A program made the position numbers and the translations under genes. This document shows, in pieces, positions 11,230 to 63,371 of a stretch of 64,000 nucleotides of DNA; position 1 is the first letter of the stretch, and each line of letters opens with the position of its first letter. The stretch is from Hydrolagus colliei (lineage: Eukaryota), in NCBI GenBank assembly GCA_035084275.1, contig CM068756.1:14942001-15006000 (forward strand), in the 5' to 3' direction. The notes beneath the pieces are model-generated. The model worked only from the letters and a program-made list of their open reading frames with translations, did no database searches and was not told where the DNA came from.

Positions 11230-14200
11230 ATGTTGGCGAGTGTTGTGTTTCAGTGTCTGTCTCTCACAGTGTGGATCATTTCTAAAGGTTTGTGACTATT
11301 CATTAGCCCAGTGATCTCAAACACAAAGTGTGTGTCTCTGTCACAGTATTTTGTTTCAAAACAATGTTTGAATTTATTTCTGACAGTTGCTGACGGTACA
11401 TTGATCACAGTAACACAACAACCCGAACAGATCACTGTCAACAGAGGTGAAAATGTGATATTCTACTGCACCATCTCTAGCACAGCGAACGTGAAACTAT
11501 ACTGGTGGAAACAGGGAGAGAGTGAATACATGGTATTGGATCACAAGAAAACATTTGAAGACGACCTTTCTGGAAGGGCCTTCTTCAGTCTCCAGGATGC
11601 AGGTCCTCAGGACTCTGGGATCTATTACTGTTCAGTGGTATTGAAGGGAAATAAAACAATAAATGGAACCGGATCACATTTAACTGTATGTGGTAAGTGA
11701 CATGATAAGGAAGAGATAGTAACTATTAAAGTTACTCAAACTATAACTTACTACCCATATAAGGCCTCTCACTGTTGATAGAGAATCTTCAAGGGCTTTA
11801 TAAAGCCTGAGGATTAGCCAGAGTTCAGACCCAGCTGGGAGGAGAGAGTGGCCGAAAGGAAGGTTAAAGAGACATGTCATCAGGCGGGGTTCGATAGGAG
11901 AGAAGGAAGATAAGAACGATGAATCCTTGTCCTCACCTTTAAAGTCCTCCATGCCCCATCTCTGCGACCTCCTGACCCCCTTCCAACCCACCCACTCCCT
12001 CTGCTCAGTGGACACTGGCCTGCTCCTTTTGTGCCGACCCACCCCACTATTGGTGGGCAAACCTCCAGCCACTCTGCCCCCAACCTCTAGAATTGCATTC
12101 TGGAATGGCCAAATGTGTCCGCAGTTTTCCAGGACATTGCTGATAATAAGAATAATAAGAATGATCCTTAAATTTGATGTAGAGGGTTTCACGTTTTTAT
12201 TTAGAGGTCTCAAGATGCTTCTCAGAATCTACTATCTTGGGCAAGTTTCCTTGCTCCACACACCTGATAATAATCCCTCCAAAAAAAACCACAATAATAA
12301 AATTGGTCATTTTAATCCACGACTGTGTGTGGGACACTGCTGTGTGCAATTGGCTGCCGCGATTCGCCAACAAATATATACAGTCAATTCACTTTGCAGT
12401 GTATTCTGTGAAGCGCTTTGGGACGTTGATAAGATGTGGAAAACGCTGCATCAAATGCAAGGATTATTATTATTATTATTACTATAAAGTGAATTGACTG
12501 CATATACTCAATGTGGACAAAAATAGCAATATGCAATTGTACAAAGCAGTGTCGCACAATCAGTCAAGAATTGAATTGGCTTTTATTACTGTCTGACAGG
12601 AGATTATTATTTTCTTTTGAGGGATTATTATTAGGTGTGTGGAGTAAGGAAACTTGCCCAAAATTTCCCTGCCTGGAATTGAACCCAGGTCTCTCGCTTC
12701 TAAGGTGAGTGATCCAGTCACTGAGCTACAGGATTCCTGATGACAACACAGTCAGCCTGGTTCAGCGGCAGGACCTGGAAAAGTCGAATAGTGACTGGGG
12801 CGGGGATTCATCCCACTGTTAATCCCACATTTCCAAGCTGTAACGTAGCAGGACAAGCAATGGGAAACTTTGCCAGACAGCAATATCAATGGGAAACTAT
12901 GCGGCTTTAGCTGGTTAGACTCCAGGCCTGTTTGTGATCTCCTTCCAATACTTAAATACAAGTTCTTCATTGTTAAAGTTCATTTTTTGTGTCTTCTGTA
13001 AAATGGAAATTGTGTCGTTTACACCAGAACCCAGTTTATATATAAACCTTTATACGTTAGTGGGAACTGACATGAACAATCACCCTGGTGAGATTTGTTA
13101 TTCACTTGATAGTTATAGAGATATATTTCTGTGCACAAATTGCCTGCCCTTCCTTTACAAATACAGCCAATACTCTTCATAGTATGTCCTGCAAAGCGAT
13201 TTGTGATGTGTTTTTATTTTAGCAAATCTTTTTATTCCAGTGCCACCAATTCCACTGAATATTGCAGCCAAATCTCCTCCAAGAGATTCATCTGTGTTTC
13301 TGACGCTCGTTTGTGAAACGGCCGCGTTTTACCCGGAGAATCTCACCTTCATATGGTCTAAAAACGGCACCGAAATTACAACCGGGATAATCAGCACTGA
13401 ATGGCAGAACCCGGAGGGATTGTATGAAGCTTCCAGCTCAGTGGAGGAGACACAGCCTGTCCGGAATGGGACAGTTTATACCTGTCAGGTGTCTCACCTC
13501 AGCCTCCAGACTCCAGCAATTGGCAACTACACGGTTCAGCTTCCACATCAAGGAAGGAATTTTAGTTTCAGTGGTAATTATCATTAACTGTCTTTCACCC
13601 GAATATTTCCTTCTTTTAATTCACATAAAGAATGATAGCTTTATTTCTCAAACGAATTTGCTTCATGTGAAATATAAATCAATTTTACTTTTTTAATGGA
13701 GAATATTTGAATTATTCTGACTGCAAGATAATATCACTTTCCCTTGAACATATTAACAATTCGGATTTCAAACGTGTAATTTCGTATACCAGTATATTGA
13801 AAGCCAACAACAATACAAACAAAATTACATGTATTGAGCACCTTTCACGTCGGGAAGACGTCCCATGGCGCTGAACAGTCAGGTCGGGACCCGAACAAGT
13901 GAGAGGGGCAGGGTAGGGAAGAGGGTCAGGAAACAATGAGGATGGGAGGGAGAGAGTTGGGAAGGCAGCAGAAGGCACGGGCGAAGAGGAGGTCTTTCGA
14001 CCGGCTTTGAAGGAGGTGAGGGAGGGAGAGAGGCGATGGGACTGTGGGATGGAGTTCCAGAGTGTGGGGGCAGAGAGGCTGATAGTCTATCCACCAATGG
14101 TCTGGTGGGTCAGTCGGAGTATATGGAGCAGACTGGAGAACGCTAAATGGAATGGGTGTGGAAGTACATAGCACGATTACTGGTAGGAGAAGACGGGGGT

Positions 14201-17200
14201 ACCATGCCATGAATGACCTTGAAAGTGAGGATGAGGATGTTGAATTCGATCCTCTGGTGGACAGGAGCTAATGCACCAAGGCGAGGGTGGGAGTGATGTG
14301 TTCATAGAGCTTGGTGCGGGTGAGGACATGAACTGCAAAGTTCTGGATGATCTGCAGCTTGTGAAGGGAAGAACCAGGAAGGCCAATGAGGAGGGAGTTT
14401 CCATATCAAGCCTTGATGTATGGCACGTGAATTTATATTGTATTAGTAAATTGTGACTTCTTAGAATCATAGAATATTACAACACAAAAGGAGGCCATTT
14501 GCCCCATTGAGTCTGTGCTGGCTCTTTGAAACGAGCAATTTAATCCTACTCCCCAGCTCTCTCCCCATAACCGTGCAAACCCATCGTCCCCAAATAAATG
14601 TCCACCTCTCTTTTAAAAGTTGTTATCGAATCGGCTTCCACCACTTTTTCAGGCAATGCATTCCAGATTCAAGCAACTCGCTGAGTGAAAACATTTCTCC
14701 TCACCTCCCCTCTGCTTCTTTTTGAAACTATTTTAAATCTGTGACCACAAGTCACTGATACATCCAACAGTAGAAACCGTTTTTCCCTGTTTACTCTGTC
14801 GAATTCCCTCAAGATCTTAAAAACCTCTATTAGGTCTTCTTGTAACCTTCTCTGCTCCAATGAGAATAAACCTAGCCTCTCTAGCCTTTCCTCATAACTG
14901 AAGTCCCTTCATTACTGGTACCATCCTCGTAAATCTCCTCTGCACCATTTCCAATGCCTTAACATCCTTCCTAAAGTGTGTGACCAGAATTGAACTCAGT
15001 GCTCTAGCTGAGGCCTAACCAAAGTTTTATAGAGTTTAGTCAGAACTTCCTGACTTTTGTATTCTATGCCCCAATTTGTAAAACCTAGTATCCCGTATGC
15101 TTGTTTTTTAACAGTTGCTACATGTCACCACTATTTCATCTCACGATCCGTCTTCAATAGCTTTATGTTAACAAAAATTATAAATTTCAGGAATTGTCAA
15201 TTATTCATTTGTTTGAAGTTCATTGGTTCCCCTGGAGCTGCAGATGAGTCTGGATGATAACGCTGCCCATTCCACAGGGCATTGGAGCACTTTGACCTGT
15301 GCCTGGACTGACAATCTTTTAGTAGATGTCTCTAACTACAGCGATCTCCCGAAAAAATAACTAAGATACCTACCACCGATTCCTCTAACCGATAATAAAT
15401 ATAGGTGTATTCACATAAAATATGAAATTAAAAACAATTTGTAATAGTTTCCTACGAAGCACTTTGAGACATCTGCTTGCTGTAATAAGGTGCTAAACCA
15501 AACACAATAATTATTATTTATTATTATTGCCAAGAGGTTTCATTATCTACAGTTGTCTCTCTACAAAATAATTAATTTACTCTTGCATCTCCTTACTGTT
15601 TAGTAAAAGTAATAGAATACCTTTTAAATGGTCAAACATCACCCAATGGCAAAACAGGAAACAAGTCACATGAACATCATGGTTTCCAACTTTTATGCAT
15701 TGTTCTTAACTGGAAAAATATGATATCCTAACTTTTTCTGACAAATTGTTCAATTATTTAAATTGTAAATCATTAGATCACAATGCGCAGATTTCTCTCT
15801 GCTGGTGTCCAGGCCAACAATGCTCGAAATCAAATTGTTGGCTCACTCTATCATTGAGGAGAAATTGGCTGCCGTTTTCACCCACAAATGCACAATCACA
15901 ACATTTTACAGTACGTCATATGAAGTATTTTGAGACGCTTTGACGACGTGATAAGATTTTACATCAATTATGTCATATAATGGATCATTATATTATAATT
16001 ATGATCTTATCTATAATAGGAAATCAGCTGCTCTATTCATTGCTGATCACTGTATCTGCAGTGGGACTGGCTTTTTTGGTTCTTTTGATGTACATTGGAA
16101 AGCGATCAATGTCAAAGAAAATGAAAGGTAAGAGTCAAATGATTTAGTTCTGGTTGGTGCTTGATTTTAGTACAGTGTAAGTGTGAAAGTACTGTAGCCC
16201 TCCAGACAGAGTTTTTCTGTTCGAAAAGGCTGACCCTTAATTTTAAAACTGTGACCCCTGGTTATAGATTCTCCTACCGGGGAAACAGTCCCTCAGTGCC
16301 TACTTTATCTAGCCCTTTAAGAATCTTATGTGTTTCAATAAGATCGCTCCTAATTCTTCTGTACTGTAGAGAATACAGCCCTACATTCAGTTTTTTTCAA
16401 CACTGAAGATTCAATACAAATTTCAGTTATTATATTTCATTCCTTTTAGGGGTACAGAGGAATCAGAATGATTTGAGCCAGCATAGCCAGCAGGTAATAT
16501 GCACACCTATATGTTATTTATAATGATATGAGGATGTTTTCAACATATTTCTTACATGATTGTCCATTTCACTTTGTCATTCAAATTGTGTTCACACCAA
16601 TATGAGGCACCAAAGCAATGCAAGCAACATAAAATACAAGTGAAAAGTTAAGTGTTGCAGTTTGTGATAATAATAATAATAATCTTTGCATTTGATATAG
16701 CGCTTTGCACATCTAATCGACATCTCAAAGCACTTCACAGAATATATGGTAACGTGAATTCATTGTATATTTGTGAGCAAAATGTGGCAGCCAATTTGCA
16801 CAACAGTGTCCCACAAACAGTCGTGGATAGAAATGAACCATTTGTATTATTGTATGTGTTTTGGGACAGATTATTAATAGGTGTAAGAAAATATAGGCAA
16901 TGCAAGCAGGAGATGATGAAATGGTGACTTATATCTCATTGAATTTGAAAACTTCCAATAAACTTTCAACACCTAAATATTAGATACAATAGTTTACACA
17001 TGAAAAACACAACATAATAGTGCATCTGAATAACTTAAAATTGATACATACAATAATATGATTCTGACTGTAATAAATAGAGTGATGCTCATGTGTTCTG
17101 TTGAGAGAACATCACTTCAGGGAGGATGTTGAAAACTTCAATGAAGATTTCCAAGAATAATTTGAGCAGACAGGACAAGTCTGTTTACATTGGAGCAAAG

Positions 17201-30172: not shown

Positions 30173-33100
30173 ATGTTGGCGAGTGTTGTGTTTCAGTGTC
30201 TGTCTCTCACAGTGTGGATCATTTCTAAAGGTTTGTGACTATTCACTATCCCAGTGATCTCAAACACAAAGTGTGTGTCTCTATCACAGTATTTTGTTTC
30301 AAAACAATGTTTGACTTTATTTCTGACAGTTGCTGACGGTACATTGATCACAGTAACACAACAACCCGAACAGATCATTGTCAACAGAGGTGAAGATGTG
30401 ACGTTAACCTGCAACATCTCTAGCACAGCGAACATAAAAATACACTGGTGGAAACAGGGAGAGAGTCAATACATTGTATGGGATCACAAGAAAACATTTG
30501 ATGTCGAATTTTCTGGAAGGGCCGTCTTCAAACTCCACGATGCAGGTCTCCAGGACTCTGGGATCTATTACTCTTCAGTGGCATTTAACGGAAATAAAAC
30601 AGTGAATGGAACTGGATCCCGTGTAACTGTATGTGGTAAGTGACATGATAAGGAAGAGATAGTAACTATTATATTTACTCAAACTATAATTTACTACCCA
30701 TATAAGGCCTCTCACTGTTGATAGAGAATCTTCAAGGGCTTTATAAAACCTGAGGATTAGCCAGAGTTCAGACCCAGCTGGGAGGAGAGAGTGGCCGAAA
30801 GGAAGGTTAAAGAGAAATGTCATCAGGCGGGGTTCGATAGGAGAGAAGGAAGATAAGAACGATGAATCCTTGTCCTCACCTTTAATGTCCTCTATGGCCT
30901 TGCCCCCCATATCTGCGACCTCCTGATCCCCTTCCAACCCACCCACTCCCTCTGCTCAGCGGACACTGGCCTGCTCCTTTTGTGCCGACCCACCCCACCA
31001 TCAGTGAGCAAACCTCCAGCCACTCTGCCCCCAACCTCTAGAATTCCATTCTGGAATGGCCAAGTGTGTCCGCAGTTTTCCAGGGCATTGCTGATAATAA
31101 GAATAATAAGAACCATCCTTACTTTGATGTAGAGGGTTTCACTTTTTTATTTAGACGTCTCAAGATGCTTCTCAGAATCTACTATCTTGGGTAAGTTTCC
31201 TTGCTCCATATGCCTGATAATAATCGCTCCAAAAAATAAACACAATAATAAAATTTGTCATTTTAATCCACGACTGTGTGTGGGACACTGCTGTGCGCAA
31301 TTGGCTGCCGCGATTCGCCCACAAATCTATACAGTCAATTCACTTTGCAGTGTATTCTGTGAAGCGCTTTGGGACGTTGATAAAATGTGGAAAACGCTGC
31401 ATCAAATGCAAGGATGATTATTATTATTATTATTACTATAAAGTGAATTGACTGCATATACTCAATGTGGACAAAAATAGCAATATGCAATTGTACAAAA
31501 TAGTGTCGCACAATTCAGAATTGAATTGGCTTTTATTACTGTTTGACAGGAGATTATTATTTTCTTTTCAGGGATTATTATTAGGTGTGTGGTAGTGGAG
31601 TAAGGAAACTTGCCCAAAACTTCGCCCTGCCTGGAATTGAACTCAGGTCTCTCGCTTCTAAGGCGAGTGATCCAGTCACTGAGCTACAGGATTCCTGATG
31701 ACAACACAGTCAGCCTGACTCAGCGGCAGGACCTGGAAAAGTGGACTAGTGACTGGGGGCGGGGATTCATCCCACTTTTAATCCCATATTTCAAAGCTGT
31801 AACCCTGTGGGAAACGCAATGGGAAACTTTGCCAGACAGCAATATCAATGGGAAACTATGCGGCTTTAACTGGTTAGACTCCAGGCCTATTTACAATCTC
31901 CTTGCAATACTTAAATACGAGTTCTTCATTGTTAGTTACAGTCCATTTTTTGTGTTTTCTGTAAAATGGAAATTGTGCCGTTTACACCAGAACCCAGTTT
32001 ATATATAAACGTTTATACGTTAGTGGGAACTGACGTGAACAATCACCCTGGTGAGATTTGTTATTCTCTTGATGGTTGTAGAGAGATATTTCTGTGCACA
32101 AATTGCCTGCCCTTCCTTTACAAATACAGCTAATACTCTTCATAGTATGTCCTGCGAAGAAATTTGAGATGTGTTTTTATTTTATCAAATATTTTTATTC
32201 CAGTGCCACCAATTCCTCTGAATATTTCAGCCAAATCTCCTCCAAGAGATTCATCTGTGTTTCTGACCCTCGTTTGTGAAACGGCCGCGTTTTACCCAGA
32301 GAATCTTACTTTCACATGGTCTAAAAACGGCACCGAAATTACAACCGGGATAATCAGCACTGAATGGCAGAATCCGGAGGGACTGTATGAAGCTTCCAGC
32401 TCAGTGGAGGAGACACAGCCTGTCCAGAATGGGACAGTTTATACCTGTCAGGTGTCTCACCTCAGCCTCCAGACTCCAGGAATTCACATCTACACATATT
32501 GGCAACGTCCACAAGGTAGGAATTTCAGTCTCAGTGGTAATTATCATCAACTGTCTTCGACCTGAATATTTCCTTCTTTTAATTCACATAAAATCCACAC
32601 ATTCTCTTTCAAGGCCAGTTTGAAGACTTTCCTCTTCGACCGTGCCTTTTGTTCCACCCCGCATTTTTCTACCTCCATTTCGTGTCTCACCCCTTCCCAA
32701 ACACTCCCCTCTCAGCTCGGGTCAGACGCCTCCTGTGCAGCGCCTTGGGACGTCCTCCCGACGTGAAAGGCGCTCTATAAGTGCAATTTGTTGTTGTTGT
32801 TTGGTGTAAAGAATGATAGCTTTATTTCACAAATGAATTTGCTTCATGTGAAATATAAATCTTTCACTTTTTTACTGGAGAATATTTGAATTATTTTGAC
32901 TGCAAGATAATATCACTTTCCCTTGAACATATTAACAATTTGGATTTCAAACGTGCATTTCGAATATATTCAATGCCAACAACAACAACAAAAACAAAAT
33001 TACATTTATAGAGCACCTTTCACGTCGGGAAGACGTCCCAAGGCGCTGAACAGTCAGGTCGGGATCCGAGCAAGTGAGAGGAGCAGGGTGGGGGAGAGGG

Positions 33101-33933
33101 TCAGGAGACAATGAGGAGGGGAGGGAGAGAGTTGGGAAGGCAGCAGAAGGCACGACCGAAGAGGAGGTCTTTAGACAGGCTTTGAAGGAGGCGAGGGAGG
33201 GAGCGAGGTGAAGGGAATGTGAGATGGAGTTCCAGAGTGTGGGGCAGAGAGGATGATAGTCCATCCACCAATGGTCGTGCGCGTCGGCGGAGAAGGGCCG
33301 GGGGGGGGGAGGTGACATGGAGCAGACTGGAGCCCACTGAACAGAAGGGGTGGGGAAGTTCATAACAAGATAACAGGTAGGAGATGTAGTGGGGGCAATG
33401 CCGTGAATGGCTTTGAAAGTGAGGAAGAGGATCATGAATTCGATCCTCCGGGGAATGGGAGCCAGTGGAGCTGGGTGAGGGTGGGAGTGATGTGATCGCA
33501 GAGCTTGGTGTGGGTGAGGACATGAGCTGCAGAGTTCTGGATGATCTGCAGCTTGGTGAAGGGAAGAATCAGGAAGGCCGACGAGAAGGGAGTTTTAATT
33601 GTAAAATGATCAGCTCTCAGGATTTATACAATTATTAGTTGAATTAGAATTAGGTAAGTTTTGACATCAATTACGGAGAGTTGATGGTACTGAAAACTCC
33701 ATCAACCAAGCGCAAACGCTGAATCACAACTTGTCCCGCTCCCCAGATTAGTTGATTTAATAAAAACATTTCAGTTAAAAGCAAGTGGCGCAAAGCTCTC
33801 ATGATTCTCTCTTTACTCGGCAGTGTTTAATGTACACGGTTATCTTGGAATATTTCGGTTTGCATTCAGCGCGTTGGTAATATTACTGATGGCCGCCATC
33901 CTTGTGGACTATTTCAAAATGAATCCTGTTTAA
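30173..33933 (+). CDS. Gene A2: activating-type VJ-C1-TM receptor with transmembrane Arg and a very short tail, about 261 aa
   Basis: join(30173..30230,30330..30635,32204..32515,33824..33933) = 786 nt, open, all introns phase 1 GT-AG. TM exon (V)FNVHGYLGIFRFAFSALVILLMAAILVDYFKMNPV*. The F-strand Cys of the V domain is Ser. Confidence 0.8.
32605..32802 (+). mobile_element. Short 3' fragment of the same young L2 family in the A2 C1-TM intron
   Basis: Near-identical to the tails of the two insertions above; (GTT)n end; absent near 13625. Confidence 0.8.
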
Positions 33934-33935
33934 CG
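33824..33935 (+). CDS. A2 Arg-containing TM exon
   Basis: ctctctttactcggcag acceptor in phase 1; hydrophobic run after Arg; TAA at 33931-33933 then CG|gtaag. The same layout recurs at 48011-48116. Confidence 0.85.
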
Positions 33936-33949
33936 GTAAGGCTTATAGA

Positions 33950-34370
33950 ATTACAGAATCATCTAATTTTATGGCACAAAAGGAAGCCATTCGACCGATC
34001 TAGTCTGTGCCGGCTCTTTGAAAAGAGCAACTCCATCCCACTGCCCCGCTTTCTCCCCATAAACTAACAGACCTGTTCTCCCTAAATAAATATCTAATTC
34101 TCTTTTAAAAGCTGTTATCGAATCGGCCTCCATCACCTTTTCAGGCAATGCATTCAAGATTCGAACAACTCGCTAAGTGAAAACATTTCTCCTCAGCTCC
34201 CCTCTGCTTCGTTTTCAAACTATTTCAAATCTGTGATCATCCACCAGTGGAAACAGTTTTTCCTTATTCACCCTGTTAATCCCCTCATCATTTTATAAAC
34301 CTCCATTAGGTCTCCTATCTGTTCTAAAGAGAATAAACCTAGCCTATCTAGCCTTTCCTCATAAGAAATT
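33950..34370 (-). mobile_element. CR1 LINE 3' fragment
   Basis: ORF 33969..34157 NALPEKVMEADSITAFKRELD, typical CR1 ORF2 end. Confidence 0.8.
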
Positions 34371-36109: not shown

Positions 36110-38601
36110 CTCACACACTGAACGTATTATATTTGCAGATTAATCAATATGGAAGTGTCTTGGCAAACTATTAAGCGTTTCCCTCATCCAGACAACCTGT
36201 ACACGCTAAGAAGCAGCTTTAGGATTCTCACTCGATGTTGAGCGGTTAGTGTGTCTGCACAGGGCTGGGCTCAGCGCACAATCGGAGTCGGGTGAAACTC
36301 ACTGAGAGTTGTCCAACCCGAGGTTGTGACAGGCTCCAATAAAACAGGAAATTATCAATGCAGTTGGCGACACGTGTACACTGTGTGGTCAGGTATATAC
36401 CGTGTGAGAAACCACGGCTTCCAATCCAGCAACAGTCACGCAATGTCACAACAGAACCAGCCAGAGGCCGAGTGAGGGTCGCCGCCACTGTGGGTTTCTC
36501 ACTCCAGAAAAACAAACTCAGCGACAATACAGCAGCGAGAGCCGAGACACAGGTGGGAGACAACACCCGCAGAGAACACAGGCTTGTACAGCAGCTACAG
36601 ACCAGGTTACTGTAGTAACTCACAGCAGGAAACAGTGACACAGACCAACCTGCCCGGCAGTCCCGCCTTGTAAACTTTATTAAAATGTTTCCCACAAAAC
36701 TGCGGGTACTTGTGGCTTTCGTTGCTTGAGGATGTTTCTCCTCGACGTTTTACTGGATATTATTCCCGATTGGCGCAAATCTTTACACACCAGCAACAAA
36801 TATACATTCCGATTATTAAAAGTGACATTGTGTTTTGTGAACATTTTAATAGCGGAGACCAGTGACGATATATCGGGGTTTGCAGCGGTTGTCAATATGA
36901 GCTCCACCTCCTGATGAGTTAAGCACAACCACAGTCACATTCTCGGCCTGTCTCAGTCCAGGGTGAGTATCGCTCGGCATCTGTATCGATCATGAATGCT
37001 GTCCCGCGGTGCTGTGGTTCACTCTCTAGAGACAGACTGACATAACCCCCCAGGAGTGATCTCAGTAAATATCTGTTTAATTGATGGGGGAGCGGACAGG
37101 GCGTCAATACAGTGGAGAGGAATTCTTGTACAAAATATGATAAACTGTGATGAGGAAAGCGGTTGAACCGGGAGCAGGGAGATAAGGTTTGATTGCTTAA
37201 CTTTGATTATTTACTCAACAAAGATTCACAACCGACAGAAAAAAACATTGATCCGGAAACATTTATGGTTCACAGTTCCGCAGCCCCACGTACACAGTAT
37301 TCTGTGAAATCATTAACACTTCTATAGCATATTGTACAAGGTCCAGCTGTGACAAAACAACAACAATAATGTACCTTCACATGTAGCGACTGTCACCTGA
37401 AGAGAGGATCCCAAACCACCTGGTGCTGAGACGCGGGGGGAGAACATGGGGGAGGACAGCTTTACTGTTCGGTTCTGAAGTCAACAACAACATCAACAAC
37501 AAGGTCAGGTGTGGGAAACGGGGGAGGGATTCTCTTTAATAGAGTTCCAAACTGGGGAACCGAGTTTGTGAGAGATCAGGTCCAGGGATGGGGCAGATCA
37601 GTCATTGGGACATGGGATACTTGTGTAGTTGCTGAGCGGATGGAGTACAAGGAGGACAGTGAGGCCATTTTAATCGTGAGATAAACATTCGCAATTGGAT
37701 TTGCTGGGGATTGGAAGCCAGTGAAACCAAACCAGGATGGAGGTGAAGGAGAAGTCCAGGAGAAGGGCTTTAGTCCAGGAGAAGGGCTGCACGGAGCAGG
37801 AGGGTCTGCAGCTTGTGTATGGAGACGCTGGGAGAGCCCGTGAGTTGGGAAGTTGATTGATCAAACCTGGATGGAAAGACTCCATCAGTGTCTCCCCAGC
37901 CATGGAGAGCGGTGGCCACTGATTCAGGTGATGTTGGGAATGTGCCGGAAAGCGATTGACAGCCAAGAAGGACGGCTGTTTTGCGGGGTCAGTCGTTGCC
38001 TGGCGGTTTGTGGGATCCCATCTCCATGCTCAAACCCATCACACCCATCCTCGCCCGAACTCACCGGCTTCCCATCACACAGAGGGTCCCAGTTCTCACC
38101 CTCAACTACAAATGTAATGGTTATTGTATTTCATGCTGGGCAAAGCAACACCGCAATACTAGGGAAGTCCACGAGTTTAATCCAAACGAGTTTGTTCACC
38201 GCAATCTTTGCTTCAGAGATGAGTGTGATATCAAGCCAGCTGAACTTACATTGAAACCACAAAGCCTGTGTATATTTATTACACTGTTATCACACAGCCT
38301 GTCCAGAATGGGACGGTTTATACCTGTCAGGTGCCTCACCTCAGCCTCCAGACTCCAGCAATTGGCAACTACACGGTTCAGTTTCCTCCTCAAGGTAGGA
38401 ATCCAAACGTGTCGGTGTTAACTGTTTCTCACAAGAACATTTCCTTCTTTCGATTTTCACCGCGAAAGTCAGCCATGTAACTTGCTTCATGTAAAATATA
38501 AATCGCTTTCATATTTTAATGGAGAACATTTGAATTGTTGTGAACGCATAATATCACCTACCCTTGAAATGTTAACACTTCGGGTTTCAAACGTTAGACA
38601 T

Positions 38602-39396
38602 TGTTGCGATTCATGAGTTTGTGCGTCTTGTTAAGTTGATGCCTCATGTTAATTCGGCATCAAGGTGTGGACTGTTGCGATTTGTAAAATCAATCCAATC
38701 ATTGTAGGGCATGTATCCAGCCTAATATGGGCATTGCTGGTCATGTGATATTTAGGCGCCAAACAGTGTGTACTTGCCAAAGTAAGCATGGTCAATGGGT
38801 ACAAGGCCAGAGTGAGGTCTTGCAATTGGCTGAGTAACTGTTCTGGGGACACGTGACCGCAAGAGCCTTGACCTTTTTAAAAGCGTCGAGACAAAGGAAT
38901 AAGCGGAGCGGAGACAGAGGAGAAGGACCTGATGGAAGACACTGTAACTGACAGTAGCCAGGCCGCTCTCGAGAAGGAGAAACAACTGATGGAAGATACT
39001 GTAACCGACAGTAGGTTGCAGAGGATAAAGAATCAACCTCTTGCTGGACAGTATACACCACCAAACAGAGCAGAGTATTGGGGTGGACAGTATACACCAC
39101 CAAACAGAGGAGAGTATTGGGGTGGACAGTATACACCACTAAACAGAGGAGAGTATTGGGGTGGACACTATACACCACCAAACAGAGCAGAGTATTGGGG
39201 TGGACACTATACACCACCAAACAGAGGAGAGTATTGGGTTGCAGAGGATAAAGAATCAATCTCTTGCTGGACAGTATACACCATTAAGGGATCCCTGTGT
39301 TTAGTGTCAAGCCCTGACGGGTTAGCCTGAATAAACAACCTGGTTTGATGAGATACGACTCTAGTGCATTTCACTCATTGGTCGAAATCTCTAACA
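38602..39396 (+). mobile_element. Solo LTR, 795 bp, related to the one at 35262
   Basis: TGTT...CTCTAACA; 4-bp TSD ACAT (38598-38601, 39397-39400); shares the GGAGAAGGACCTGATGGAAGA...GCCAGGCCGCTCTCGAGAA block; AATAAA near 39330. Confidence 0.85.
39046..39240 (+). repeat. 39-bp minisatellite, five copies, inside the solo LTR
   Basis: Unit GGACAGTATACACCACCAAACAGAG(C/G)AGAGTATTGGGGT starting at 39046, 39085, 39124, 39163 and 39202. Confidence 0.95.
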
Positions 39397-42300
39397 ACAT
39401 CTAATACATTCTTTCCAAGAACGCGAGTATGAAAGTGAATTTCCATCCCTCAACCTCTTAATTACGAGTTAACATTATGTCCCCCTCTATTTCATCTCAC
39501 GACCCATCTTCAGCACCGCTTTATTAAACAATTTTAAAATGATTTGCTCTCAGGCATTTTACAAAGATGCTTTCATTCAAAACCCAGTCCCACGATTTCT
39601 CTGGAGCCGCAGCTGAGACTGGAAGATGATCCTGTGGATGATGATCTCCAGGATATGTTGTTTCACCCCATAATAGCTCAGCATATTTTCATCCGATCTT
39701 AATTTGGCTGCATTTGGCAATTTTTTATACATGCCTCCATCTGCAGCTGTATCCCCATAAAACAACTAAGATAGCTGCCGCAGATCTACTTTTCTGATAA
39801 TAAATACATTCACCCACAAAATATAGAGTCATAAAAACACTTGGCAACACAGTTTCCTGCGAGGCGCTTTGAGACGTCTGCCTGGTGTAATAAACCGCTA
39901 TGTCAAATGCAAGGATTCTTATTTATTATTATTGTTGTCGAGAGGTTTCGTTGTCCGACATGAAAGGGGCTATACAAATGTAATTCTGTTGTTGTTGTTG
40001 TCTACAGTTGCCTCTCTGTTAAATAATAAACTTTCTCTCTCCCTTACTATTCAGTAGGAAAAAAATCAAATACCTTATTTTAAACGGGTCAAACACAACC
40101 TGATAGAGAAGCAGGAAACAAGTTCCATGAAACATCTCGGTTTCCATTTGTTTTATATATTGTTCTTCAATTTTTTTTAAAATGATCCTAATTTGTGCTG
40201 AAACACATTATTCTTTCTGATGAATTGTGTAATTATTGAAACAGTAAACCACTGGATCACTAGTGTCTAATTCCATTTCTCATCTCACAGTTTCCAAGCC
40301 AACCATCCCACAAATCAAATTGTTGGGTTTACTCTAAGATCACTGTGCCAAAATTGGATGCCGCGATCGCCCCCGAAATACACAATCACAACATTTTACA
40401 CTGCATCATGTGAAGCGTTACGAGAGGCTTTGACCATGCGATAACATTAGCTGGAGTGCTCTGAGACGCCGTCCGGCCTGGAGGGCGCTATATAAATCGA
40501 AGTTGTTGTTGTTGTTGTTATATCAAATACACACTTCATCATATCATTCCTATGATGTCGGCTACAGTAAGAAATAATGAGCTTCCTGAAACATTACCCA
40601 TCACCGGGTCTGCAGTGGGGGGTGCTTTTCTTGGTGCTGTTGGTGTACATGCGAACGCGCTTTCAGTTAAAGAAAATGAAAGGTAAGGTTCAAATTATTT
40701 TGTTTCGGTTAATGGTGAAAGCTTGATTTTAGTACATGTAAGTGTGAAAGTGCTATATCTCTCTGGCAATGCACAGATACAGATTTTCATAGAAAAATAG
40801 AAACTCTGGATGTCCAATTGTTTTTACTCTTATCATTCTTCACTGGAGATTCAGTAAAATTTCAGTTATATTTCTTTCATTTTAGGGGTGCTCAGGAAAC
40901 AGAATGATTGTGACCACTGTACCCAGCAGGTAATATACATCCCAGGCAGTGTTTACTACCCAAAGGGTGATTGATAACATTGAAAAAGATTTTGTTGTTT
41001 ATAACTGGATGAGAATGCTTTTACAATATTTCTTACCTGACTGACAGTTTCACTGTGTCACTCAAAATATGTTCACACCAATATGAGTCATCTGGTCTTG
41101 AGAAAAGACCATATATTTGGGTAAAAGTTGAAAGTTGCAGTTTGTGATTTTCAGGTACTGCCAGGAGGAGATGCTGAGATGGTGATTTATATGACACTGG
41201 ATCTGAAAAGTTCCAATAATCGTTCAAGACCCAAACATCAGGAAGATAGCACAGTTTATGCCAAGGTACATTTGAAAAACATAACATCGACATTTACAAT
41301 CACGCTATTCTAACCGTAAGAGATAGATTGAAGCTCATGTGTTCTGTATTGGACACCTCACTTCAGGAAAGATGTTAGAACATACAGAGAAGAATTGTGA
41401 AATATGGTTTATAGAAACCGTATACAGAAATAAATTATTCCCATTGTTCAGGGAGTCAGCAAGTAGAGGACAAGTATAAGGTGGTCACATGGAGTGAAAG
41501 AAATGTATCTTTTTAAACACAAGGAGTTGTTTTGGTACAATATGAGATGCAGAGTCTGTTGCAAGTTTCAAGAGAGAAGTAGAAAGGTACATGAAAAATA
41601 TGCTTCACCGGGCCTCTACTCTGTTTATACAACCTCGACAAGTTATCCCAAATATTGTTTATTTGTGAGTGGGCCTTGACAGTGAATCCAGAAGGAAGTA
41701 GATAGGTACTTGAAAAATATGCTAACCCTAAACCTAGTCCAATTATTCAGGAACACCATAACTTATTCCCCCACCAAAGAAAATTATGTGCGAGCCTAGA
41801 TAGTTAGTGCATTAATCTAGGCTGCTTGATAGACATCAGAGCTGAATGGAAACTGTCTCACGCATCTCTTTCCAAAAGACAATTGGCGAATCGCACACTA
41901 TCCGAGAGTCTCTCCTGCTTCCCAGACAAGTACGTTGAGGCCATTTGCTGCATCCATGGACAACTCTGGGAGGGAGGTGGGTACCTCTGGGTTCTTATGG
42001 ATGGGTTTGGAACTGAACAATTGTCTTTGCAATTCAGCTGCTGCAGGAGAAGCAATTGAGTATTATTTTTTACCAAAAGACTGAATTAATCATTCGATAA
42101 CAACGTTTAAAAGCAAGGTAGACATTTATTTGGGGAGGACGGGTTTGCGAGGTTATGGGGAGAGAGCTGGGGAGTGGGATAAAATTGTTGTTTTTAAAGA
42201 GCCAGCACAGACTCGATGGGCTGAATGGCCTCCTTTTGTACCATAAGATTCTATGATTCTAAGATTCTATGATAATTAAATTCCAATTACTTGATTTTTT

Positions 42301-43140
42301 ATAGATCAACCAAAACACAGAAGACAATAAGCAGGTAAATGCTGCTTTGGAGTTTTCTGGCCTGGAGAAAGTAGGAAAACCTAAGAGAAGTGATCCAAAT
42401 ACAGTGTATGCCTTGGTGCAGGTGAGAAATCATGAAGGACATTGGAGCCCATTTACAGGGAATCAAAATCAATGATGTGTTGTATTAATTGGTGCAAGAG
42501 CTTATTATTAGATCAAAGGGATGGTAGTTTCCCTACTATACAAAATAATGTGTAAAGTAATGCCATGTTACTTGTCTATCACTGAGCCCAGTGCAGCTAA
42601 ACATCACTGTCAAGTGCATACCTACATTCATTGGCACTGCTTTCCAATTTGAAAACTACCAATGGCCACCAGAATGATTTCCATCTCCCCTCTCCCTGTG
42701 TGCACATACTCACATCAATAGATATAATTTATAAACCAATACTTAGTATAATGGTTGTATTCTCTGTGATAGAGATTGAGTTCTCCCACACCAAATGTTG
42801 TGCTGCTAGTGCACAACCATTATTTCCAGAGGACACTGCAGTTTAACAATCATAGAATCCTGCCAGAGAAGGGAAATAGGCCATTCTTTCCAAACCAAGC
42901 TGCACTCATGTCTTTTCCACACTAGTTAACCCAATCTAAAATTTCCATTGGCTCCTCAATCCATTGAGCTCTTCCTTCATTACAAATTGGTCATTTTCAA
43001 ACCACGACTGTTTGTGGGACACTGCTGTGTGCAATTGGCTGCCGCATTTCACCCACAGATACACAGTAATTCACTTTACAGTATATTCTGTGAAGAGCTT
43101 TGAAACATCGATAAGATGTGAAAAGAGCTATATCAAACAT

Positions 43141-43465
43141 GGAGCTCCTGTGGCTCAGTGGCTAGAGCACTAGCCTTAAAGGTGTGAGACCTATGTTCGA
43201 ATCCAGGCACATCAGAGTGAAACCTTAGGCAAGTTTCCTCTACTCTACATGCCAAATAATAATCCATTAAAAAAAACACAATTTAAAAAAATTGGTCATT
43301 TCAATCCATGGCTGTTTGCGGGACACTGTTGTGCGCAATTGTCTGCTGCATTTCACCTACAAGTATACAGTCATTTCCCTATACAATGTATTCTATGAAG
43401 TGCTTGAGACATCATTAAGATGTGAAAAGCGCTATATCAAATGCAAGGATTATTTATTATTATTG
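43141..43465 (+). mobile_element. Full-length SINE abutting the last I3 exon
   Basis: A box TGGCTCAGTGG, B box GTTCGAATCC, family body and tail. Confidence 0.85.
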
Positions 43466-43899
43466 GTTTTACAGGCCAAGCAAGGGGCAGCTGCTGACAA
43501 ACTGACATGCTGTTTTAGAATTTTCTGCCTCCAAGACAACAAGAAAACCTAAACACAGTGACAAGAATACAGAGTATGCCGAGATACAGGTGAAAAAAAA
43601 CCAGAGTAGCAATAGAAGCCATCACAAACCATGGAACAGGATCCAAATAATCTTACAGTGATAGGTGCAGAAGCTGATTAGAGTTCGGTACAATGTTAGC
43701 CATTTCAATGTGGAAAGTAATCCTGGTTAAATTTATTTCCGGATTAAATACTCATCAGTGATGTTTTGTATGTATCTGATCATGTTGTTAGACCTAACTG
43801 ATGAATTTTTAATTCAGAAATAGTCAATTATACTGCAATAAAGAAACATGTACCATGTTTTGTGAACTTTTCCATAAAGACCAATTCCAAATCATAAAA

Positions 43900-44445: not shown

Positions 44446-45574
44446 TTTCTCCTTTAATCATATTGTTTTTTCAATATTCACCAAATGTGGTATGCGTTAG
44501 CTTGAAATCTGGTTAACAGAATGTCAAATTAGCTCAATTCATCTTCATCGGTGAAAAAAGGCTTCTAACATTCTGTAATTAATGTGTTAAATAATATCTC
44601 AAATTATATTAGCAATATTTGAAACATGTAATGAATTACATATGATGGAAGTTGGTTGTGACTCATTTTACAGTAAAAAAAGACTGTTTATAAACAACAA
44701 ATGGTTTTCAGTCATTAACAGTAATTTTCTTATCGAAAAACCTCAACAATAACAAAATTACATTTATATAGTACCTTTCATGGTTGGTCTGCAGCTGGAG
44801 AGGGAGCTGTGTTACATTTGTTTTTGCAAAGGAACAATCTTGTAAAAAGACAATAGGAGAATGGCTATCTAATGAACTGGATAAAGAGGGGTTGATTTAA
44901 GAAAGAGGAAGGAGAAAGGAACAAATTGGAACTTGGAGTAGTGAACTCCAAGTTCACTAATTCCAGCTTCAGCAGAAAGGGAAGATCAAGACTGAGTGGA
45001 GGAACTCTGGACATACATTAGTGCTTGGATATTGAACTGGGAACTGCACAATAATACCTGGATTAGTGGAACTTAAAGAAAGATCCGCCCAATAAACATG
45101 TAGAAACATAAGACGCTGTTCTGACTTTACCTGAAGTTGTGTCGCTGGAGGTACTGTTAAAGTTAAATATAATTCAGTTTCTCTCGGAGCTGAAGATACT
45201 TCAGACTGAACTGCCAATGTCTCTGAAGCCTGTATGCATTTACAATTCCTCAGTAGGCCGCGTCTCTCAATTCCATGAATGACCAGTGAGAAATCCCACC
45301 TGGGGAACAACAGATTGACACAATTTATGTAGCATTTCAATGACCCCAATTTGGCAAATTGTTGAATTCAGTCTAAACTTTGAAGTTGTTATCTGTAGCT
45401 CTTAAAATAATGTATACAAAACGGGGGCTTCGAAATCAAAGCTGCATTAAAGAATTTGTTGCATTCTGGATGTTCAATAATGCTACATTAGTGTAGTAGT
45501 GTAGTAGATCCAGGCCAACCTACACGCCCCTGAAAAGTATCCTTAGAGGAGGGTTAATGAGGATTCCTTAGAAC

Positions 45575-46364
45575 AAGGGTCCGGCGATATATCGATATAT
45601 CACTAAAACCCGATATAATTTTCATATCGATACGCCGATAAAGGCACTTCAAAAATATCGATATATCGACTTTTCGATATATCGAGGTGAAAATCGGAAT
45701 ACCCAGAATGCTCATCTCTATACACAATGCACAGACCGAGGTGCAAAACTGCCATATTGTATTCATAGTCCTCGAATACAATATACAAGTATGAAAGGGG
45801 TGGGGGTGGGGGTGTGTGGGGAGGGGGGCGAGAGACGGCTGGGGGGGGAGGGGGCGAGAGACGGCTGGGGGGGGAGGGGGAGAGATACGGCTGGGGGGTG
45901 GGGGGGTGGGGGGGAGGGGGAGAGAGACGGCTGGGGCGGGGAGGAAGAGAGAGATGGCGGGGGGTGGGGGGGGAGGGGGAGAGAGACGGCTGGGTGGGGG
46001 TGGGGGGGGAGAGAGATGGTGGGGGGCCGGTGGGAGAGAGGGACGGTGGCGGGGGGGGGTGGGGGGCGAGACGGGGTGGATGTGATAATATAGATACATA
46101 GAGATGGGGGGGATGTGAGAGAGGAGAGAGACACAGAGACACAGACAGAAAAACACAGAGATAGAGAGAGTGAGTGTGAGAGACACAGAGAGAGAAAGAT
46201 ATTTACCTCCTGAGGAGATAGGCCCCGAATGCGCGCACACCCCGAATGCGCACACCTCGCGCATGCGCAGTACGAAAAACCCGAAAATATCGATATTTCG
46301 GTATATCTCGATATGAGCCCATCGATATATCTAAATCAGAAAATTTCTATATCGACGGACCCTA
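45575..46364. mobile_element. Non-autonomous hAT-type DNA transposon (MITE), 790 bp
   Basis: Perfect 8-bp TSD CTTAGAAC (45567-45574, 46365-46372); 17-bp TIRs with 15/17 match (TAGGGTCCGTCGATATA); many ATCGATAT subterminal repeats; G-rich core. Confidence 0.88.
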
Positions 46365-47463: not shown

Positions 47464-48116
47464 CTATCCCGATACATCAAAAAATACTCTACAAAGTGTT
47501 GGACAGGAACCCGACCACCTCTCTGACTCTAGTTTGTGAAACGGATGAGTTTTACCCAGAAGATATCACTATCACTTGCTATAAAGATGATAAGAACATT
47601 TTGGCTGTGAATACAATCAAACAGCTTGGGAGAGGTGGGAGAGATATAAAGCTTCAAGCTCCGTGGAAGAGACAAAGCCTATCCACAGAGGGACTGTTTA
47701 CACCTGTCTGGTATCTCACCTGAGCCTTGGGACTCTAATCATTGCTATGTACGTTGTTTCTGGTTCTTACCAAGGAAAACTTGTGTTTTTCTTCTAAATC
47801 TTGTTGCTGATGATGTGTTTTCATTGTTGTTATGCACTCCAACACCTCCACCTTGCCCACAATATTAACTGAACAGAATTAACCATCATATCAAGTTCCT
47901 GAGCTATTGAACGCCATGTGCGCTGTGCCATTATCAGTCCTCCAAGAGAAGGATGTTTTATTTCTTGGCAAACACTATATTTGTTATATATTGTTGTATT
48001 TATTTTGCAGCTGCTGATCAGGGGATACAGAGGGCTATGTTAACACTGTGTTTATTGTTGATGCTGTTGTTGACAGTTATCATTGTGGACTAGCATAAAA
48101 CCAACACTATTTGAAG
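47464..48116 (+). pseudogene. Gene A4: activating-type relic (frameshifted C1 exon plus Arg-TM exon)
   Basis: C1 about 47464-47774: LTLVCETDEFYPEDITITCYK...frameshift...YKASSSVEETKPIHRGTVYTCLVSHLSL. TM exon 48011-48116: (A)ADQGIQRAMLTLCLLLMLLLTVIIVD*HKTNTI* then AG|gtaag. No leader or V exon found. Confidence 0.8.
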
Positions 48117-63256: not shown

Positions 63257-63371
63257 GGTACCCGCAGCGATCACTAGCTCACTGACTGACTGACTCACTG
63301 ACTAGCTCACTCACTCACTAACTATCTCACTCACTCACTAACCCTTCCCTCAACTCGCGGTGTGCGGCGGC

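What the first reader, a model, noticed from the sequence alone, without database searches (positions are those of the whole stretch)
33824..33935. Hidden Arg-containing TM exon with a conserved stop two bases before the splice donor
Seen: GIFRFAFSALVILLMAAILVDYFKMNPV* then CG|gtaag. The A4 exon has GIQR...IIVD*HKTNTI* then AG|gtaag, so the Arg, the terminal Asp and the stop-NN-donor layout are conserved. Known: Arg near the N-terminal end of the TM is the FcR-gamma/CD3-zeta-pairing signature of LILRA, GPVI, OSCAR, FCAR, NKp46 and NKp30, whereas SIRPB1 uses a Lys with DAP12; a stop this close to the last junction escapes NMD. Inference: a SIRP-like ectodomain signalling through an FcR-gamma-type adaptor.
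Basis: partly seen in the sequence, partly recalled or inferred. Interest (0 to 1): 0.8.

Follow-up and report, generated by a model that had tools for sequence, protein, structure and literature searches.

The report
Activating-type membrane exon, shark SIRP-like receptor
The flagged 112 bases are very likely a real exon giving the "activating" membrane anchor (buried arginine, seven-residue tail) of an immune receptor gene in a chimaera-type fish, next to a near-identical "inhibitory" twin; this is an ordinary paired-receptor design, but the anchor is shared by sharks and chimaeras.

Summary
Window 33824-33935 has an AG acceptor with a pyrimidine tract. It sits in the phase-1 frame that continues the upstream C1 exon. 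It encodes VFNVHGYLGIFRFAFSALVILLMAAILVDYFKMNPV, then TAA, CG, then gtaagg.

It is the last recognisable exon of gene A2 (leader, V, C1, TM). A2's 5' half is about 95% identical to the neighbouring gene A1, which instead has an uncharged TM exon and an ITIM tail.

The same TM module (Arg, 16 residues, Asp/Glu, usually His) ends RefSeq models in Callorhinchus and six shark species. The Callorhinchus protein stops at the same codon.

In sharks the donor lies in the same alignment column and is used. Indels of 1-2 nt change the frame, so 4-47 unconserved residues come from a downstream exon. Stop-NN-donor is therefore a chimaera-lineage variant of "short tail", not an ancient layout.

The Arg sits at position 5-6 of the helix, which fits an FcRgamma/CD3zeta-type partner. 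No adaptor, transcript or downstream exon could be tested here.

Verdict: a new member of a known kind, of moderate interest.

The parts
30173..30230 (+). A2 leader exon (MLASVVFQCLSLTVWIISK + 1 nt), donor gtttgt
   Evidence: It matches the leader of Callorhinchus P0006 and is 100% identical to the A1 leader exon.
30330..30635 (+). A2 V exon with a J-like motif (NGTGSRVTV). The second canonical Cys is replaced (YYS instead of YYC).
   Evidence: Pfam V-set/Ig_3. Against A1: dN 0.141, dS 0.072.
32204..32515 (+). A2 C1-set exon, phase 1 at both ends, donor gtagga
   Evidence: PF07654, E=1.6e-14. dN/dS against A1 is 0.13 over the first 90 codons.
33800..33823 (+). Pyrimidine tract and AG acceptor of the TM exon
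   Evidence: catgattctctctttactcggcag.
33824..33935 (+). The finding: connecting peptide, Arg-bearing TM helix and 7-residue tail, then TAA and CG
33856..33858 (+). Arg codon (CGG), position 5 of the best 21-residue hydrophobic window
33907..33909 (+). Asp codon (GAC) at the cytosolic end of the helix, 17 residues after the Arg
33931..33933 (+). Stop codon TAA, 2 nt before the donor
33936..33941 (+). Donor gtaagg, in the same alignment column as the donors used in shark orthologous exons
34085..34090 (+). AATAAA about 150 nt after the stop, inside a repeat. It is a possible polyadenylation signal if the donor is not used.
   Evidence: sequence only; not tested.
11230..13552 (+). A1 (the inhibitory twin): leader 11230-11287, V exon 11387-11692, C1 exon 13241-13552
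16019..16133 (+). A1 uncharged TM exon (GNQLLYSLLITVSAVGLAFLVLLMYIGKRSMSKKMK)
16450..16983 (+). A1 cytoplasmic exons 16450-16493 and 16897-16983 (ITIM VTYISL, then TAG)
14401..14462 (+). The place in A1 that corresponds to A2 33596-33954. It holds 62 unrelated nt and no TM-act exon.
38292..43616 (+). A3 remnant: 3' half of a C1 exon (38292-38393), a frameshifted uncharged TM exon (about 40607-40699), and ITIM-type exons at 40885-40935, 41152-41277, 42305-42421 and 43506-43616
47464..47757 (+). A4 C1 pseudo-exon: frameshift near 47600-47625, conserved Trp changed to Cys, donor GT lost
48011..48116 (+). A4 TM pseudo-exon: Arg codon 48031-33, Asp codon 48088-90, TAG 48091-93, TGA 48112-14, AG, donor gtaaga at 48117

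Best explanation
The window is from a cartilaginous fish, most likely a holocephalan. It carries a tandem cluster of non-rearranging V(J)-C1 immunoglobulin-superfamily receptor genes of SIRP-like type.

Gene A2 has a leader (30173), a V exon (30330-30635), a C1 exon (32204-32515) and the flagged exon (33824-33935). It is the activating-type partner of gene A1, which has an uncharged TM exon and an ITIM tail.

Shown:
- The flagged exon supplies a membrane helix with Arg about five residues in from the outer face.
- An Asp sits at the inner face, followed by a 7-residue tail with no signalling motif.
- The exon belongs to a TM module shared by sharks and chimaeras.
- The donor after the stop is the ancestral donor of that module. 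Shark gene models splice it to a small terminal exon.
- In the holocephalan copies the frame runs into a stop 2 nt before the donor.

Inferred:
- The downstream exon, if still spliced, is untranslated.
- The Arg recruits an Asp-bearing ITAM adaptor dimer. The depth of the Arg points to an FcRgamma/CD3zeta type.
- Ligand binding by A2 therefore activates the cell, while the same or a related ligand on A1 inhibits it.
For: Exon anatomy and frame.

Family identity:
- Pfam V-set plus C1-set.
- Best solved relatives are SIRPalpha (1.6e-20), UrIg2 (1.9e-18) and SIRPgamma (2e-18).
- Best protein relatives are Callorhinchus milii and shark models named SIRPA-like or tapasin-related-like.

Homologous TM module: it ends XP_007902896.1 (Callorhinchus), XP_038662024/5 (Scyliorhinus), XP_041048274 (Carcharodon), XP_067905015 (Heterodontus), XP_067853651 (Heptranchias), XP_072403667 and XP_043563377 (Chiloscyllium). 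The Arg-to-acid spacing is 17 in 8 of 9.

Donor in the same column and used: Scyliorhinus terminal exon SVKD* lies 16 kb downstream; Chiloscyllium and Heptranchias terminal exons were mapped.

Pairing with A1:
- The ~95% nt block ends about 80 nt after the C1 donor.
- A1 has an uncharged TM exon and the ITIM VTYISL.

Selection pattern that fits two working genes:
- C1 dN/dS is 0.13.
- V dN is 0.141, against an intron divergence of about 0.05 and dS of 0.072.

Family-wide interleaving: on an ectodomain tree, all 8 activating-type members sit apart among 18 ITIM members. Eight changes are needed, and at least 6 are forced by well-supported branches.
Against: - No transcript evidence. The conceptual A2 and A1 proteins are not in the 15-billion-protein collection.
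- The A2 V domain has lost its second canonical Cys, and its neighbours A3 and A4 are dead genes. A2 could therefore be freshly disabled.
- The exon downstream of the donor could not be found.
- No adaptor was shown in any cartilaginous fish here. PMC4016189 states that the gamma chain appeared with bony fish.
- The TM exon has no detectable sequence relative among solved receptor/adaptor complexes.
- One Heptranchias member has Gln in place of the Arg.
Confidence: 0.7

Rival explanations
1. The exon is genuine, but the donor is a fossil. In this lineage the exon is the terminal exon, and transcripts end at a polyadenylation site shortly downstream. On this reading the stop-NN-donor layout has no function, and the NMD argument is not needed.
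For: - AATAAA lies at 34085-34090, about 150 nt after the stop.
- No conserved downstream block is shared by A2 and A4 apart from repeats.
- The residues after the Asp are unconserved in length and frame among species, so nothing downstream is needed for the protein.
Against: - The donor keeps a strong GTAAG in A2 and even in the pseudogene A4.
- The same donor column is used in five shark gene models.
- The AATAAA lies inside a repeat that is also present in A1.
Confidence: 0.3
2. A2 is a recently disabled or non-expressed gene copy. The exon is intact only because too little time has passed for it to decay.
For: - The V domain has YYS instead of YYC, a single TGT-to-TCT change.
- The adjacent copies A3 and A4 are pseudogenes.
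- No matching annotated protein exists.
Against: - All four exons are open, with intact AG/GT sites and matching phases.
- C1 dN/dS is 0.13.
- V-exon non-synonymous divergence is about three times the intron divergence, which relaxed constraint alone cannot produce.
Confidence: 0.2
3. The receptor is activating, but it couples to a DAP12/DAP10-type adaptor rather than FcRgamma/CD3zeta.
For: From established knowledge, Arg is also used by DAP12 or DAP10 partners (mouse Ly49D/H, NKG2D, Siglec-14). SIRPbeta1, the mammalian activating SIRP, uses DAP12. No FcRgamma was found in cartilaginous fish here, and PMC4016189 dates it to bony fish.
Against: - The Arg is at helix position 5-6. From memory, DAP12 partners carry the basic residue mid-helix, whereas FcRgamma/zeta carry their Asp near the outer face.
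- From memory, the Arg-x16-acid layout matches human FCAR, NCR1, GP6 and LILRA2.
Confidence: 0.25
4. No adaptor is involved. The Arg and Asp are interfacial (snorkelling) residues, and the protein is a signalling-dead decoy or ligand sink, like SIRPgamma.
For: - Arg and Asp bracket the hydrophobic core 17 residues apart.
- One family member has Gln at the Arg position.
Against: - Only 16 hydrophobic residues lie between Arg and Asp. That is too few to span the bilayer, so the 4-6 hydrophobic residues before the Arg must be in the membrane, and the Arg is buried.
- The Arg is kept in 8 of 9 intact members across chimaeras and sharks.
Confidence: 0.12

Closest known systems
Mammalian SIRP family (SIRPalpha inhibitory / SIRPbeta1 activating / SIRPgamma)
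   Same: - N-terminal V domain with a J-like strand, followed by a C1-set domain.
- SIRPalpha is the best solved relative.
- Inhibitory ITIM members and short-tailed members with a charged TM share near-identical ectodomains in one gene cluster.
   Different: - Two Ig domains here (V-C1), not three (V-C1-C1).
- The charged residue is Arg near the outer face, not a mid-helix Lys.
- Orthology, synteny and CD47 binding were not tested.
- UrIg2 and SIRPgamma score only about 100-fold worse than SIRPalpha, so 'SIRP-like' describes architecture and is not an orthology call.
FcRgamma/CD3zeta-coupled activating IgSF receptors (LILRA, GPVI, OSCAR, FCAR, NKp46, PIR-A, chicken CHIR-A)
   Same: - Arg in the outer third of the TM helix and a very short tail.
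- From my memory of the human sequences, an acidic residue 17 positions after the Arg (FCAR, NCR1, GP6, LILRA2).
- Paired with ITIM-bearing relatives.
   Different: - Different ectodomain type: those are C2/I-set, this is V-C1.
- The NxxR motif is absent in A2.
- No sequence homology of the TM exon could be shown.
- The adaptor is unproven in cartilaginous fish.
RefSeq models of the same chondrichthyan family (for example XP_007902896.1 Callorhinchus, XP_038662024.1 Scyliorhinus, XP_041048274.1 Carcharodon)
   Same: Same exon order, the same TM module Arg-x16-Asp/Glu-(His), and the same donor column. The Callorhinchus model stops at the same codon.
   Different: - At most 65% identical to A2.
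- Shark members read past the donor into a terminal exon.
- They carry misleading automatic names (MHC class II beta-like, tapasin-related-like, NCR3LG1-like).
- My literature searches found no description of the family.
UrIg / UrIg2 (non-rearranging VJ-C1 genes of elasmobranchs; PMC12227049)
   Same: Germline-joined VJ plus C1 domains. UrIg2 is the second-best solved relative (9dmx, 1.9e-18).
   Different: UrIg2 has nine C1-type domains and forms Fc-like dimers. The paper does not mention ITIMs at all (0 occurrences), and I saw no paired ITIM/Arg-TM organisation in the passages I read.

Membership tests
Activating member of a paired IgSF receptor family | Ectodomain closely related to that of an ITIM-bearing paralogue in the same cluster | tested here: met
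   - A2 and A1 share a ~95% nt block from upstream of the leader to about 80 nt past the C1 exon.
- Ectodomain identity is 84% at amino-acid level, and they are sister rows with 100/99 support.
- A1 has the ITIM VTYISL.
Activating member of a paired IgSF receptor family | Basic residue inside the TM helix | tested here: met
   Arg at position 5 of LGIFRFAFSALVILLMAAILV.
Activating member of a paired IgSF receptor family | Short cytoplasmic tail without signalling motifs | tested here: met
   The tail is YFKMNPV, then a stop.
Activating member of a paired IgSF receptor family | Physical and functional association with an ITAM (or YxxM) adaptor | not testable with these tools
   This needs co-expression and co-immunoprecipitation. 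The search for a chondrichthyan FcRgamma was uninformative.
SIRP family | V-set domain with a J-like motif, followed by C1-set domain(s) | tested here: met
   Pfam V-set and C1-set. Motif NGTGSRVTV. SIRPalpha is the top PDB hit.
SIRP family | Three-domain V-C1-C1 ectodomain | tested here: not met
   Only one C1 exon lies between the V and TM exons. Annotated homologues are also V-C1.
SIRP family | Activating member carries a mid-helix Lys (DAP12 partner) | tested here: not met
   A2 has Arg at helix position 5 and no Lys in the helix.
SIRP family | Orthology or synteny with tetrapod SIRP genes; CD47 as ligand | not tested
   No genome-wide eukaryote search or synteny data were available. The only other gene recognised in the window is a GST N-terminal exon.
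FcRgamma/CD3zeta-coupled receptors | Arg in the outer third of the TM helix | tested here: met
   Position 5-6 of 21 in 8 of 9 family members.
FcRgamma/CD3zeta-coupled receptors | NxxR motif, as described for LILRA/PIR-A/XFL-type TM segments | tested here: not met
   A2 has GIFR. Only the Chiloscyllium plagiosum member has NIFR.
FcRgamma/CD3zeta-coupled receptors | Sequence homology of the TM exon to known members | tested here: inconclusive
   A profile of 10 TM exons against all PDB chains gave only chance serpin matches. The segments are too short for a fair test.
FcRgamma/CD3zeta-coupled receptors | The adaptor gene is present in the lineage | tested here: inconclusive
   The human FCER1G query listed only tetrapod proteins, from 150 word-indexed candidates. 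PMC4016189 dates the gamma chain to bony fish. That CD3zeta is present in sharks rests on my own knowledge and was not tested.
Chondrichthyan Arg-x16-Asp/Glu-His TM module | Phase-1 exon after C1, Arg, 17-residue spacing to Asp/Glu, and a donor 24-26 nt after the acid codon | tested here: met
   A2 differs only in having Tyr instead of His after the Asp.

The most novel reading that the evidence does not exclude
The Arg-x16-Asp/Glu TM exon is the cartilaginous-fish counterpart, by descent, of the Arg...Glu TM exon of tetrapod FcRgamma-coupled receptors (LILRA, FCAR, NKp46, GPVI). If so, coupling of IgSF receptors to a gamma/zeta-type adaptor would date to the first jawed vertebrates. So would the repeated exchange of ectodomains between ITIM genes and Arg-TM genes: 8 interleaved activating members on the ectodomain tree, with at least 6 switches forced. 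That is earlier than the bony-fish origin proposed for the gamma chain.
Probability: 0.2. Interest if true: 0.6.

Novelty: new member of a known kind. Interest (0 to 1): 0.4.

Why it matters
Paired activating and inhibitory receptors are a recurring outcome of host-pathogen conflict. They have been studied mostly in mammals, birds, frogs and bony fish. This locus shows one such pair caught close to its origin in a chimaera-type fish:
- The 5' halves are about 95% identical.
- The V domain changes faster than neutral.
- The membrane and tail ends are swapped.

The locus also ties the activating end to a TM module shared by chimaeras and sharks. That gives a defined construct (A2 and its Arg and Asp mutants) for asking which ITAM adaptor the earliest-branching jawed vertebrates use.

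The stop-NN-donor detail is a lineage-specific way of making a short tail. It matters mainly for correct gene annotation, because it implies an intron in the 3' UTR.

Tried and rejected
1. A word search restricted to the TM part of XP_007902896.1 found only the protein itself.

2. DNA look-ups of XP_007902896.1 and of the shorter Scyliorhinus isoform were not on record. The stop-NN-donor layout could therefore not be seen at DNA level in Callorhinchus. The one Callorhinchus locus I fetched (L006) holds only inhibitory-type exons.

3. I considered a single gene that makes both forms by alternative splicing, with TM-act as a cassette exon ahead of a TM-inh exon plus ITIM exons. I rejected it for four reasons:
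- The downstream uncharged TM exon belongs to remnant A3 and is frameshifted.
- A1 lacks the TM-act exon.
- Two shark activating loci hold no ITIM exons.
- A short Callorhinchus isoform clustered with an ITIM form has the uncharged TM.

4. Comparing the regions 3' of A2 and A4 to find the terminal exon gave only transposable-element matches.

5. A profile of the TM exon against PDB gave only chance serpin matches.

6. The human FCER1G query returned tetrapods only, so it says nothing about sharks.

7. Exact look-up of my conceptual A1 and A2 proteins found neither in the collection.

8. Literature searches for a description of this family, or of ITAM adaptors in cartilaginous fish, found nothing specific.

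9. My first protein queries carried one spurious Gly at the V/C1 junction (VTVCG-V instead of VTVC-V). This does not affect the results.

Full report
**1. The observation**

- A pyrimidine-rich tract ends in AG at 33822-33823.
- The exon runs 33824-33935. It opens with two bases that complete a codon, so it is phase 1.
- It encodes (V)FNVHGYLGIFRFAFSALVILLMAAILVDYFKMNPV.
- It stops at TAA (33931-33933), followed by CG and the donor gtaagg (33936).

The C1 exon upstream ends at 32515, also in phase 1, so the proposed junction 32515^33824 is in frame.

It reads AADQGIQRAMLTLCLLLMLLLTVIIVD, TAG, HKTNTI, TGA, AG, gtaaga.

The two exons align better than 500 shuffles (z = 4.5). Their last 38 nt align without a gap.

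**2. What lies around it**

The window is vertebrate DNA with many transposable elements. It holds a tandem cluster of immunoglobulin-superfamily genes.

- A0: only the ITIM-type cytoplasmic exons are present, at the left edge (87-2072).
- A1: leader at 11230, V exon 11387-11692, C1 exon 13241-13552, an uncharged TM exon 16019-16133, and cytoplasmic exons 16450-16493 and 16897-16983. The last carries the ITIM VTYISL and then a TAG.
- A2: leader ATG at 30173, V exon 30330-30635, C1 exon 32204-32515, and the flagged exon.
- A3: a remnant made of half a C1 exon at 38292, a frameshifted uncharged TM exon near 40607, and ITIM exons up to 43616.
- A4: a pseudogene. Its C1 exon is frameshifted, has Cys for the conserved Trp, and has lost its donor GT. 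No V exon is detectable. A TAG follows the Asp of its TM exon.

A1 and A2 share a block of about 95% nucleotide identity that ends about 80 nt after the C1 donor. Beyond that point only repeat-level similarity remains (85% and 79%). Where A2 has 359 nt that include the flagged exon, A1 has 62 unrelated nt. A2 is therefore an A1-like 5' half joined to a different 3' end.

**3. What the genes are**

Pfam finds V-set/Ig and C1-set domains. The best solved relatives of the ectodomain are SIRPalpha (2wng, 1.6e-20), UrIg2 (9dmx, 1.9e-18) and SIRPgamma (4i2x, 2e-18), ahead of antibody light chains.

The closest proteins in the large collection are Callorhinchus milii models, at no more than 65% identity, followed by shark models. 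A fetched Callorhinchus locus shares repeat families with the window. The source is therefore a cartilaginous fish, most probably a holocephalan. The genes are not any annotated Callorhinchus gene in the collection.

Most relatives have an uncharged TM and several ITIM-like motifs.

**4. The exon is a member of an old TM module**

XP_007902896.1 of Callorhinchus ends ...AISRFTLSMLLILFLAIIIVDHFRKNPL. It has the same Arg, the same Asp and the same tail length as A2 (tblastn E = 3.5e-6 against the window).

A full HMMER scan of 1.84 billion representatives found further members. They come from:
- Heterodontus
- Heptranchias (two members, one with Gln in place of the Arg)
- Scyliorhinus
- Carcharodon
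- two Chiloscyllium species

In 8 of 9 sequences that carry the Arg:
- the Arg is at position 5-6 of the best 21-residue hydrophobic window;
- an Asp or Glu follows exactly 17 residues later;
- the acid is usually followed by His.

A4 has a spacing of 19.

**5. The donor and the stop**

I fetched five shark loci and mapped the models onto them.

In each, the TM exon follows the C1 exon and ends at a GTAAG or GTGAG donor. That donor falls in the same alignment column as the window's donor.

The distance from the acid codon to the donor differs:

| Copy | Distance (nt) | Note |
|---|---|---|
| A2 | 26 | stop before donor |
| A4 | 26 | stop before donor |
| Heterodontus | 26 | no stop |
| Carcharodon | 25 | |
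| Heptranchias | 25 | |
| Scyliorhinus | 24 | |
| Chiloscyllium plagiosum | 9 | |

The exon therefore ends in phase 2, 1 or 0, depending on the species. The models continue into a terminal exon that encodes 4 to 47 unconserved residues. Examples are Scyliorhinus SVKD*, 16 kb downstream and shared by four isoforms, and Chiloscyllium, 22 kb downstream.

Two conclusions follow:
- The donor is an ancestral feature that is in use.
- The residues after the Asp are free to vary.

The stop two bases before the donor is how the holocephalan copies happen to end. It is seen at DNA level only in A2 and the pseudogene A4, and at protein level in one Callorhinchus model.

I could not locate the exon downstream of A2's donor. 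The regions 3' of A2 and A4 share only repeats. An AATAAA 150 nt after the stop leaves open that the exon is now terminal.

**6. Is A2 alive?**

In favour:
- All four exons are open, with intact splice signals and matching phases.
- The C1 core shows dN/dS of 0.13 against A1.
- The V exon has dN of 0.141, against dS of 0.072 and an intron divergence of about 0.05. Non-synonymous change faster than neutral is what diversifying selection on a ligand-binding domain produces. Decay alone cannot produce it.

Against:
- The second canonical Cys of the V domain is Ser in A2 (TGT to TCT).
- The neighbours A3 and A4 are dead.
- Neither conceptual protein is in the protein collection.
- There is no transcript evidence.

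**7. Family-wide pattern**

I built a maximum-likelihood tree of the V-C1 ectodomain columns from 8 Arg-TM members and 18 ITIM members.
- Every Arg-TM member sits apart among ITIM members.
- This needs 8 changes of state, and at least 6 are forced by well-supported branches.
- A2 and A1 are sisters with 100/99 support.

The Arg-TM exons are clearly one module, so ectodomains and membrane/tail ends have been recombined repeatedly. This behaviour is known from KIR, LILR/PIR, Siglec, CEACAM and SIRP pairs.

**8. Mechanism**

Shown:
- a type-I V-C1 receptor with a buried Arg, an Asp at the inner face and a 7-residue tail;
- an ITIM-bearing twin next door.

Inferred from established knowledge of receptor-adaptor assembly:
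- The Arg pairs with the TM Asp of a dimeric ITAM adaptor.
- The shallow depth of the Arg matches FcRgamma/CD3zeta, whose Asp lies near the outer face, better than DAP12, whose Asp is mid-helix.
- From my memory of the human sequences, FCAR, NCR1, GP6 and LILRA2 also have an acidic residue 17 positions after the Arg. This is a lead, not a test.

Tests I could run were uninformative:
- The TM profile finds nothing in PDB.
- An FCER1G query returned only tetrapods.
- A 2014 survey dates the gamma chain to bony fish (PMC4016189).

The adaptor claim therefore stands at roughly 0.4. The claim that this is an activating-type TM exon of a paired receptor stands at roughly 0.7-0.8.

**9. Comparison and novelty**

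The exon works like the activating members of paired IgSF families.

It is SIRP-like in architecture but fails two SIRP features: it has two domains rather than three, and an outer Arg rather than a mid-helix Lys. Orthology was not tested.

It is a clear member of an unnamed chondrichthyan family that RefSeq already predicts under misleading names. My literature searches found no description of that family.

It is a new member of a known kind. The new points are the module's presence in both chimaeras and sharks, and the fresh A1/A2 pair. Interest is 0.4.

Noticed in passing
window 11387-11692 vs 30330-30635: The V exons of A1 and A2 differ at 35 of 306 nt (27 of 102 residues), while the flanking introns differ by about 5%. 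dN is 0.141 against dS of 0.072. This looks like diversifying selection on the ligand-binding domain of an inhibitory/activating pair.
   Followed up: partly
window 30575-30583 (A2) vs 11632-11640 (A1): A2 has Ser where the second canonical V-domain Cys should be (YYS against YYC in A1 and in all homologues seen). It is a single-base change that may destabilise the domain.
   Followed up: partly
window 16897-16983: A1's second cytoplasmic exon has an in-frame TAG right after the first ITIM (VTYISL...PKY*). The further ITIM-type exons at 18063-18179, 18968-19126 and 19982-20119 would then be untranslated, or belong to another transcript form.
   Followed up: partly
window 30624-30635 and 11681-11692: A Cys closes the J-like strand at the V/C1 boundary (LTVC|VPP) in A1, A2 and several Callorhinchus members. 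Sharks have Tyr there (LTVY|VPP). It may be a free Cys used for dimer formation.
   Followed up: no
window 63008-63298, minus strand: An open first exon of a glutathione S-transferase (MADSMLLYWGSGSPPCWRVMLALEEKQL...; Pfam GST_N_2, 1.9e-5). It is the only non-Ig gene recognised in the window.
   Followed up: partly
window 45554-46264: A Pro/Gly-rich low-complexity stretch, open in several frames on both strands. It lies where A4's V exon would be expected. It may mark the event that destroyed A4's 5' half.
   Followed up: no
window 57596-57727: A run of 132 N (assembly gap or masked). I left it untouched.
   Followed up: no
window 13626-14400 / 32807-33595 and 14463-14897 / 33955-34364: Two repeat elements flank the TM-act exon in A2. 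The same families occur in A1 at only 85% and 79% identity, against 95% for the duplicated block. The second begins about 10 nt after the donor hexamer (aligned from about 33951-33955) and starts ...AGAATCAT..CACAAAAGGA(A/G)GCCATT. The A1/A2 recombination breakpoint therefore lies in or near repeats.
   Followed up: partly
P0031 (Heptranchias perlo XP_067853650.1): One shark member of the TM module has Gln where the others have Arg (VVLQLFVG...ILVDH). It may be a member that has lost adaptor coupling.
   Followed up: no
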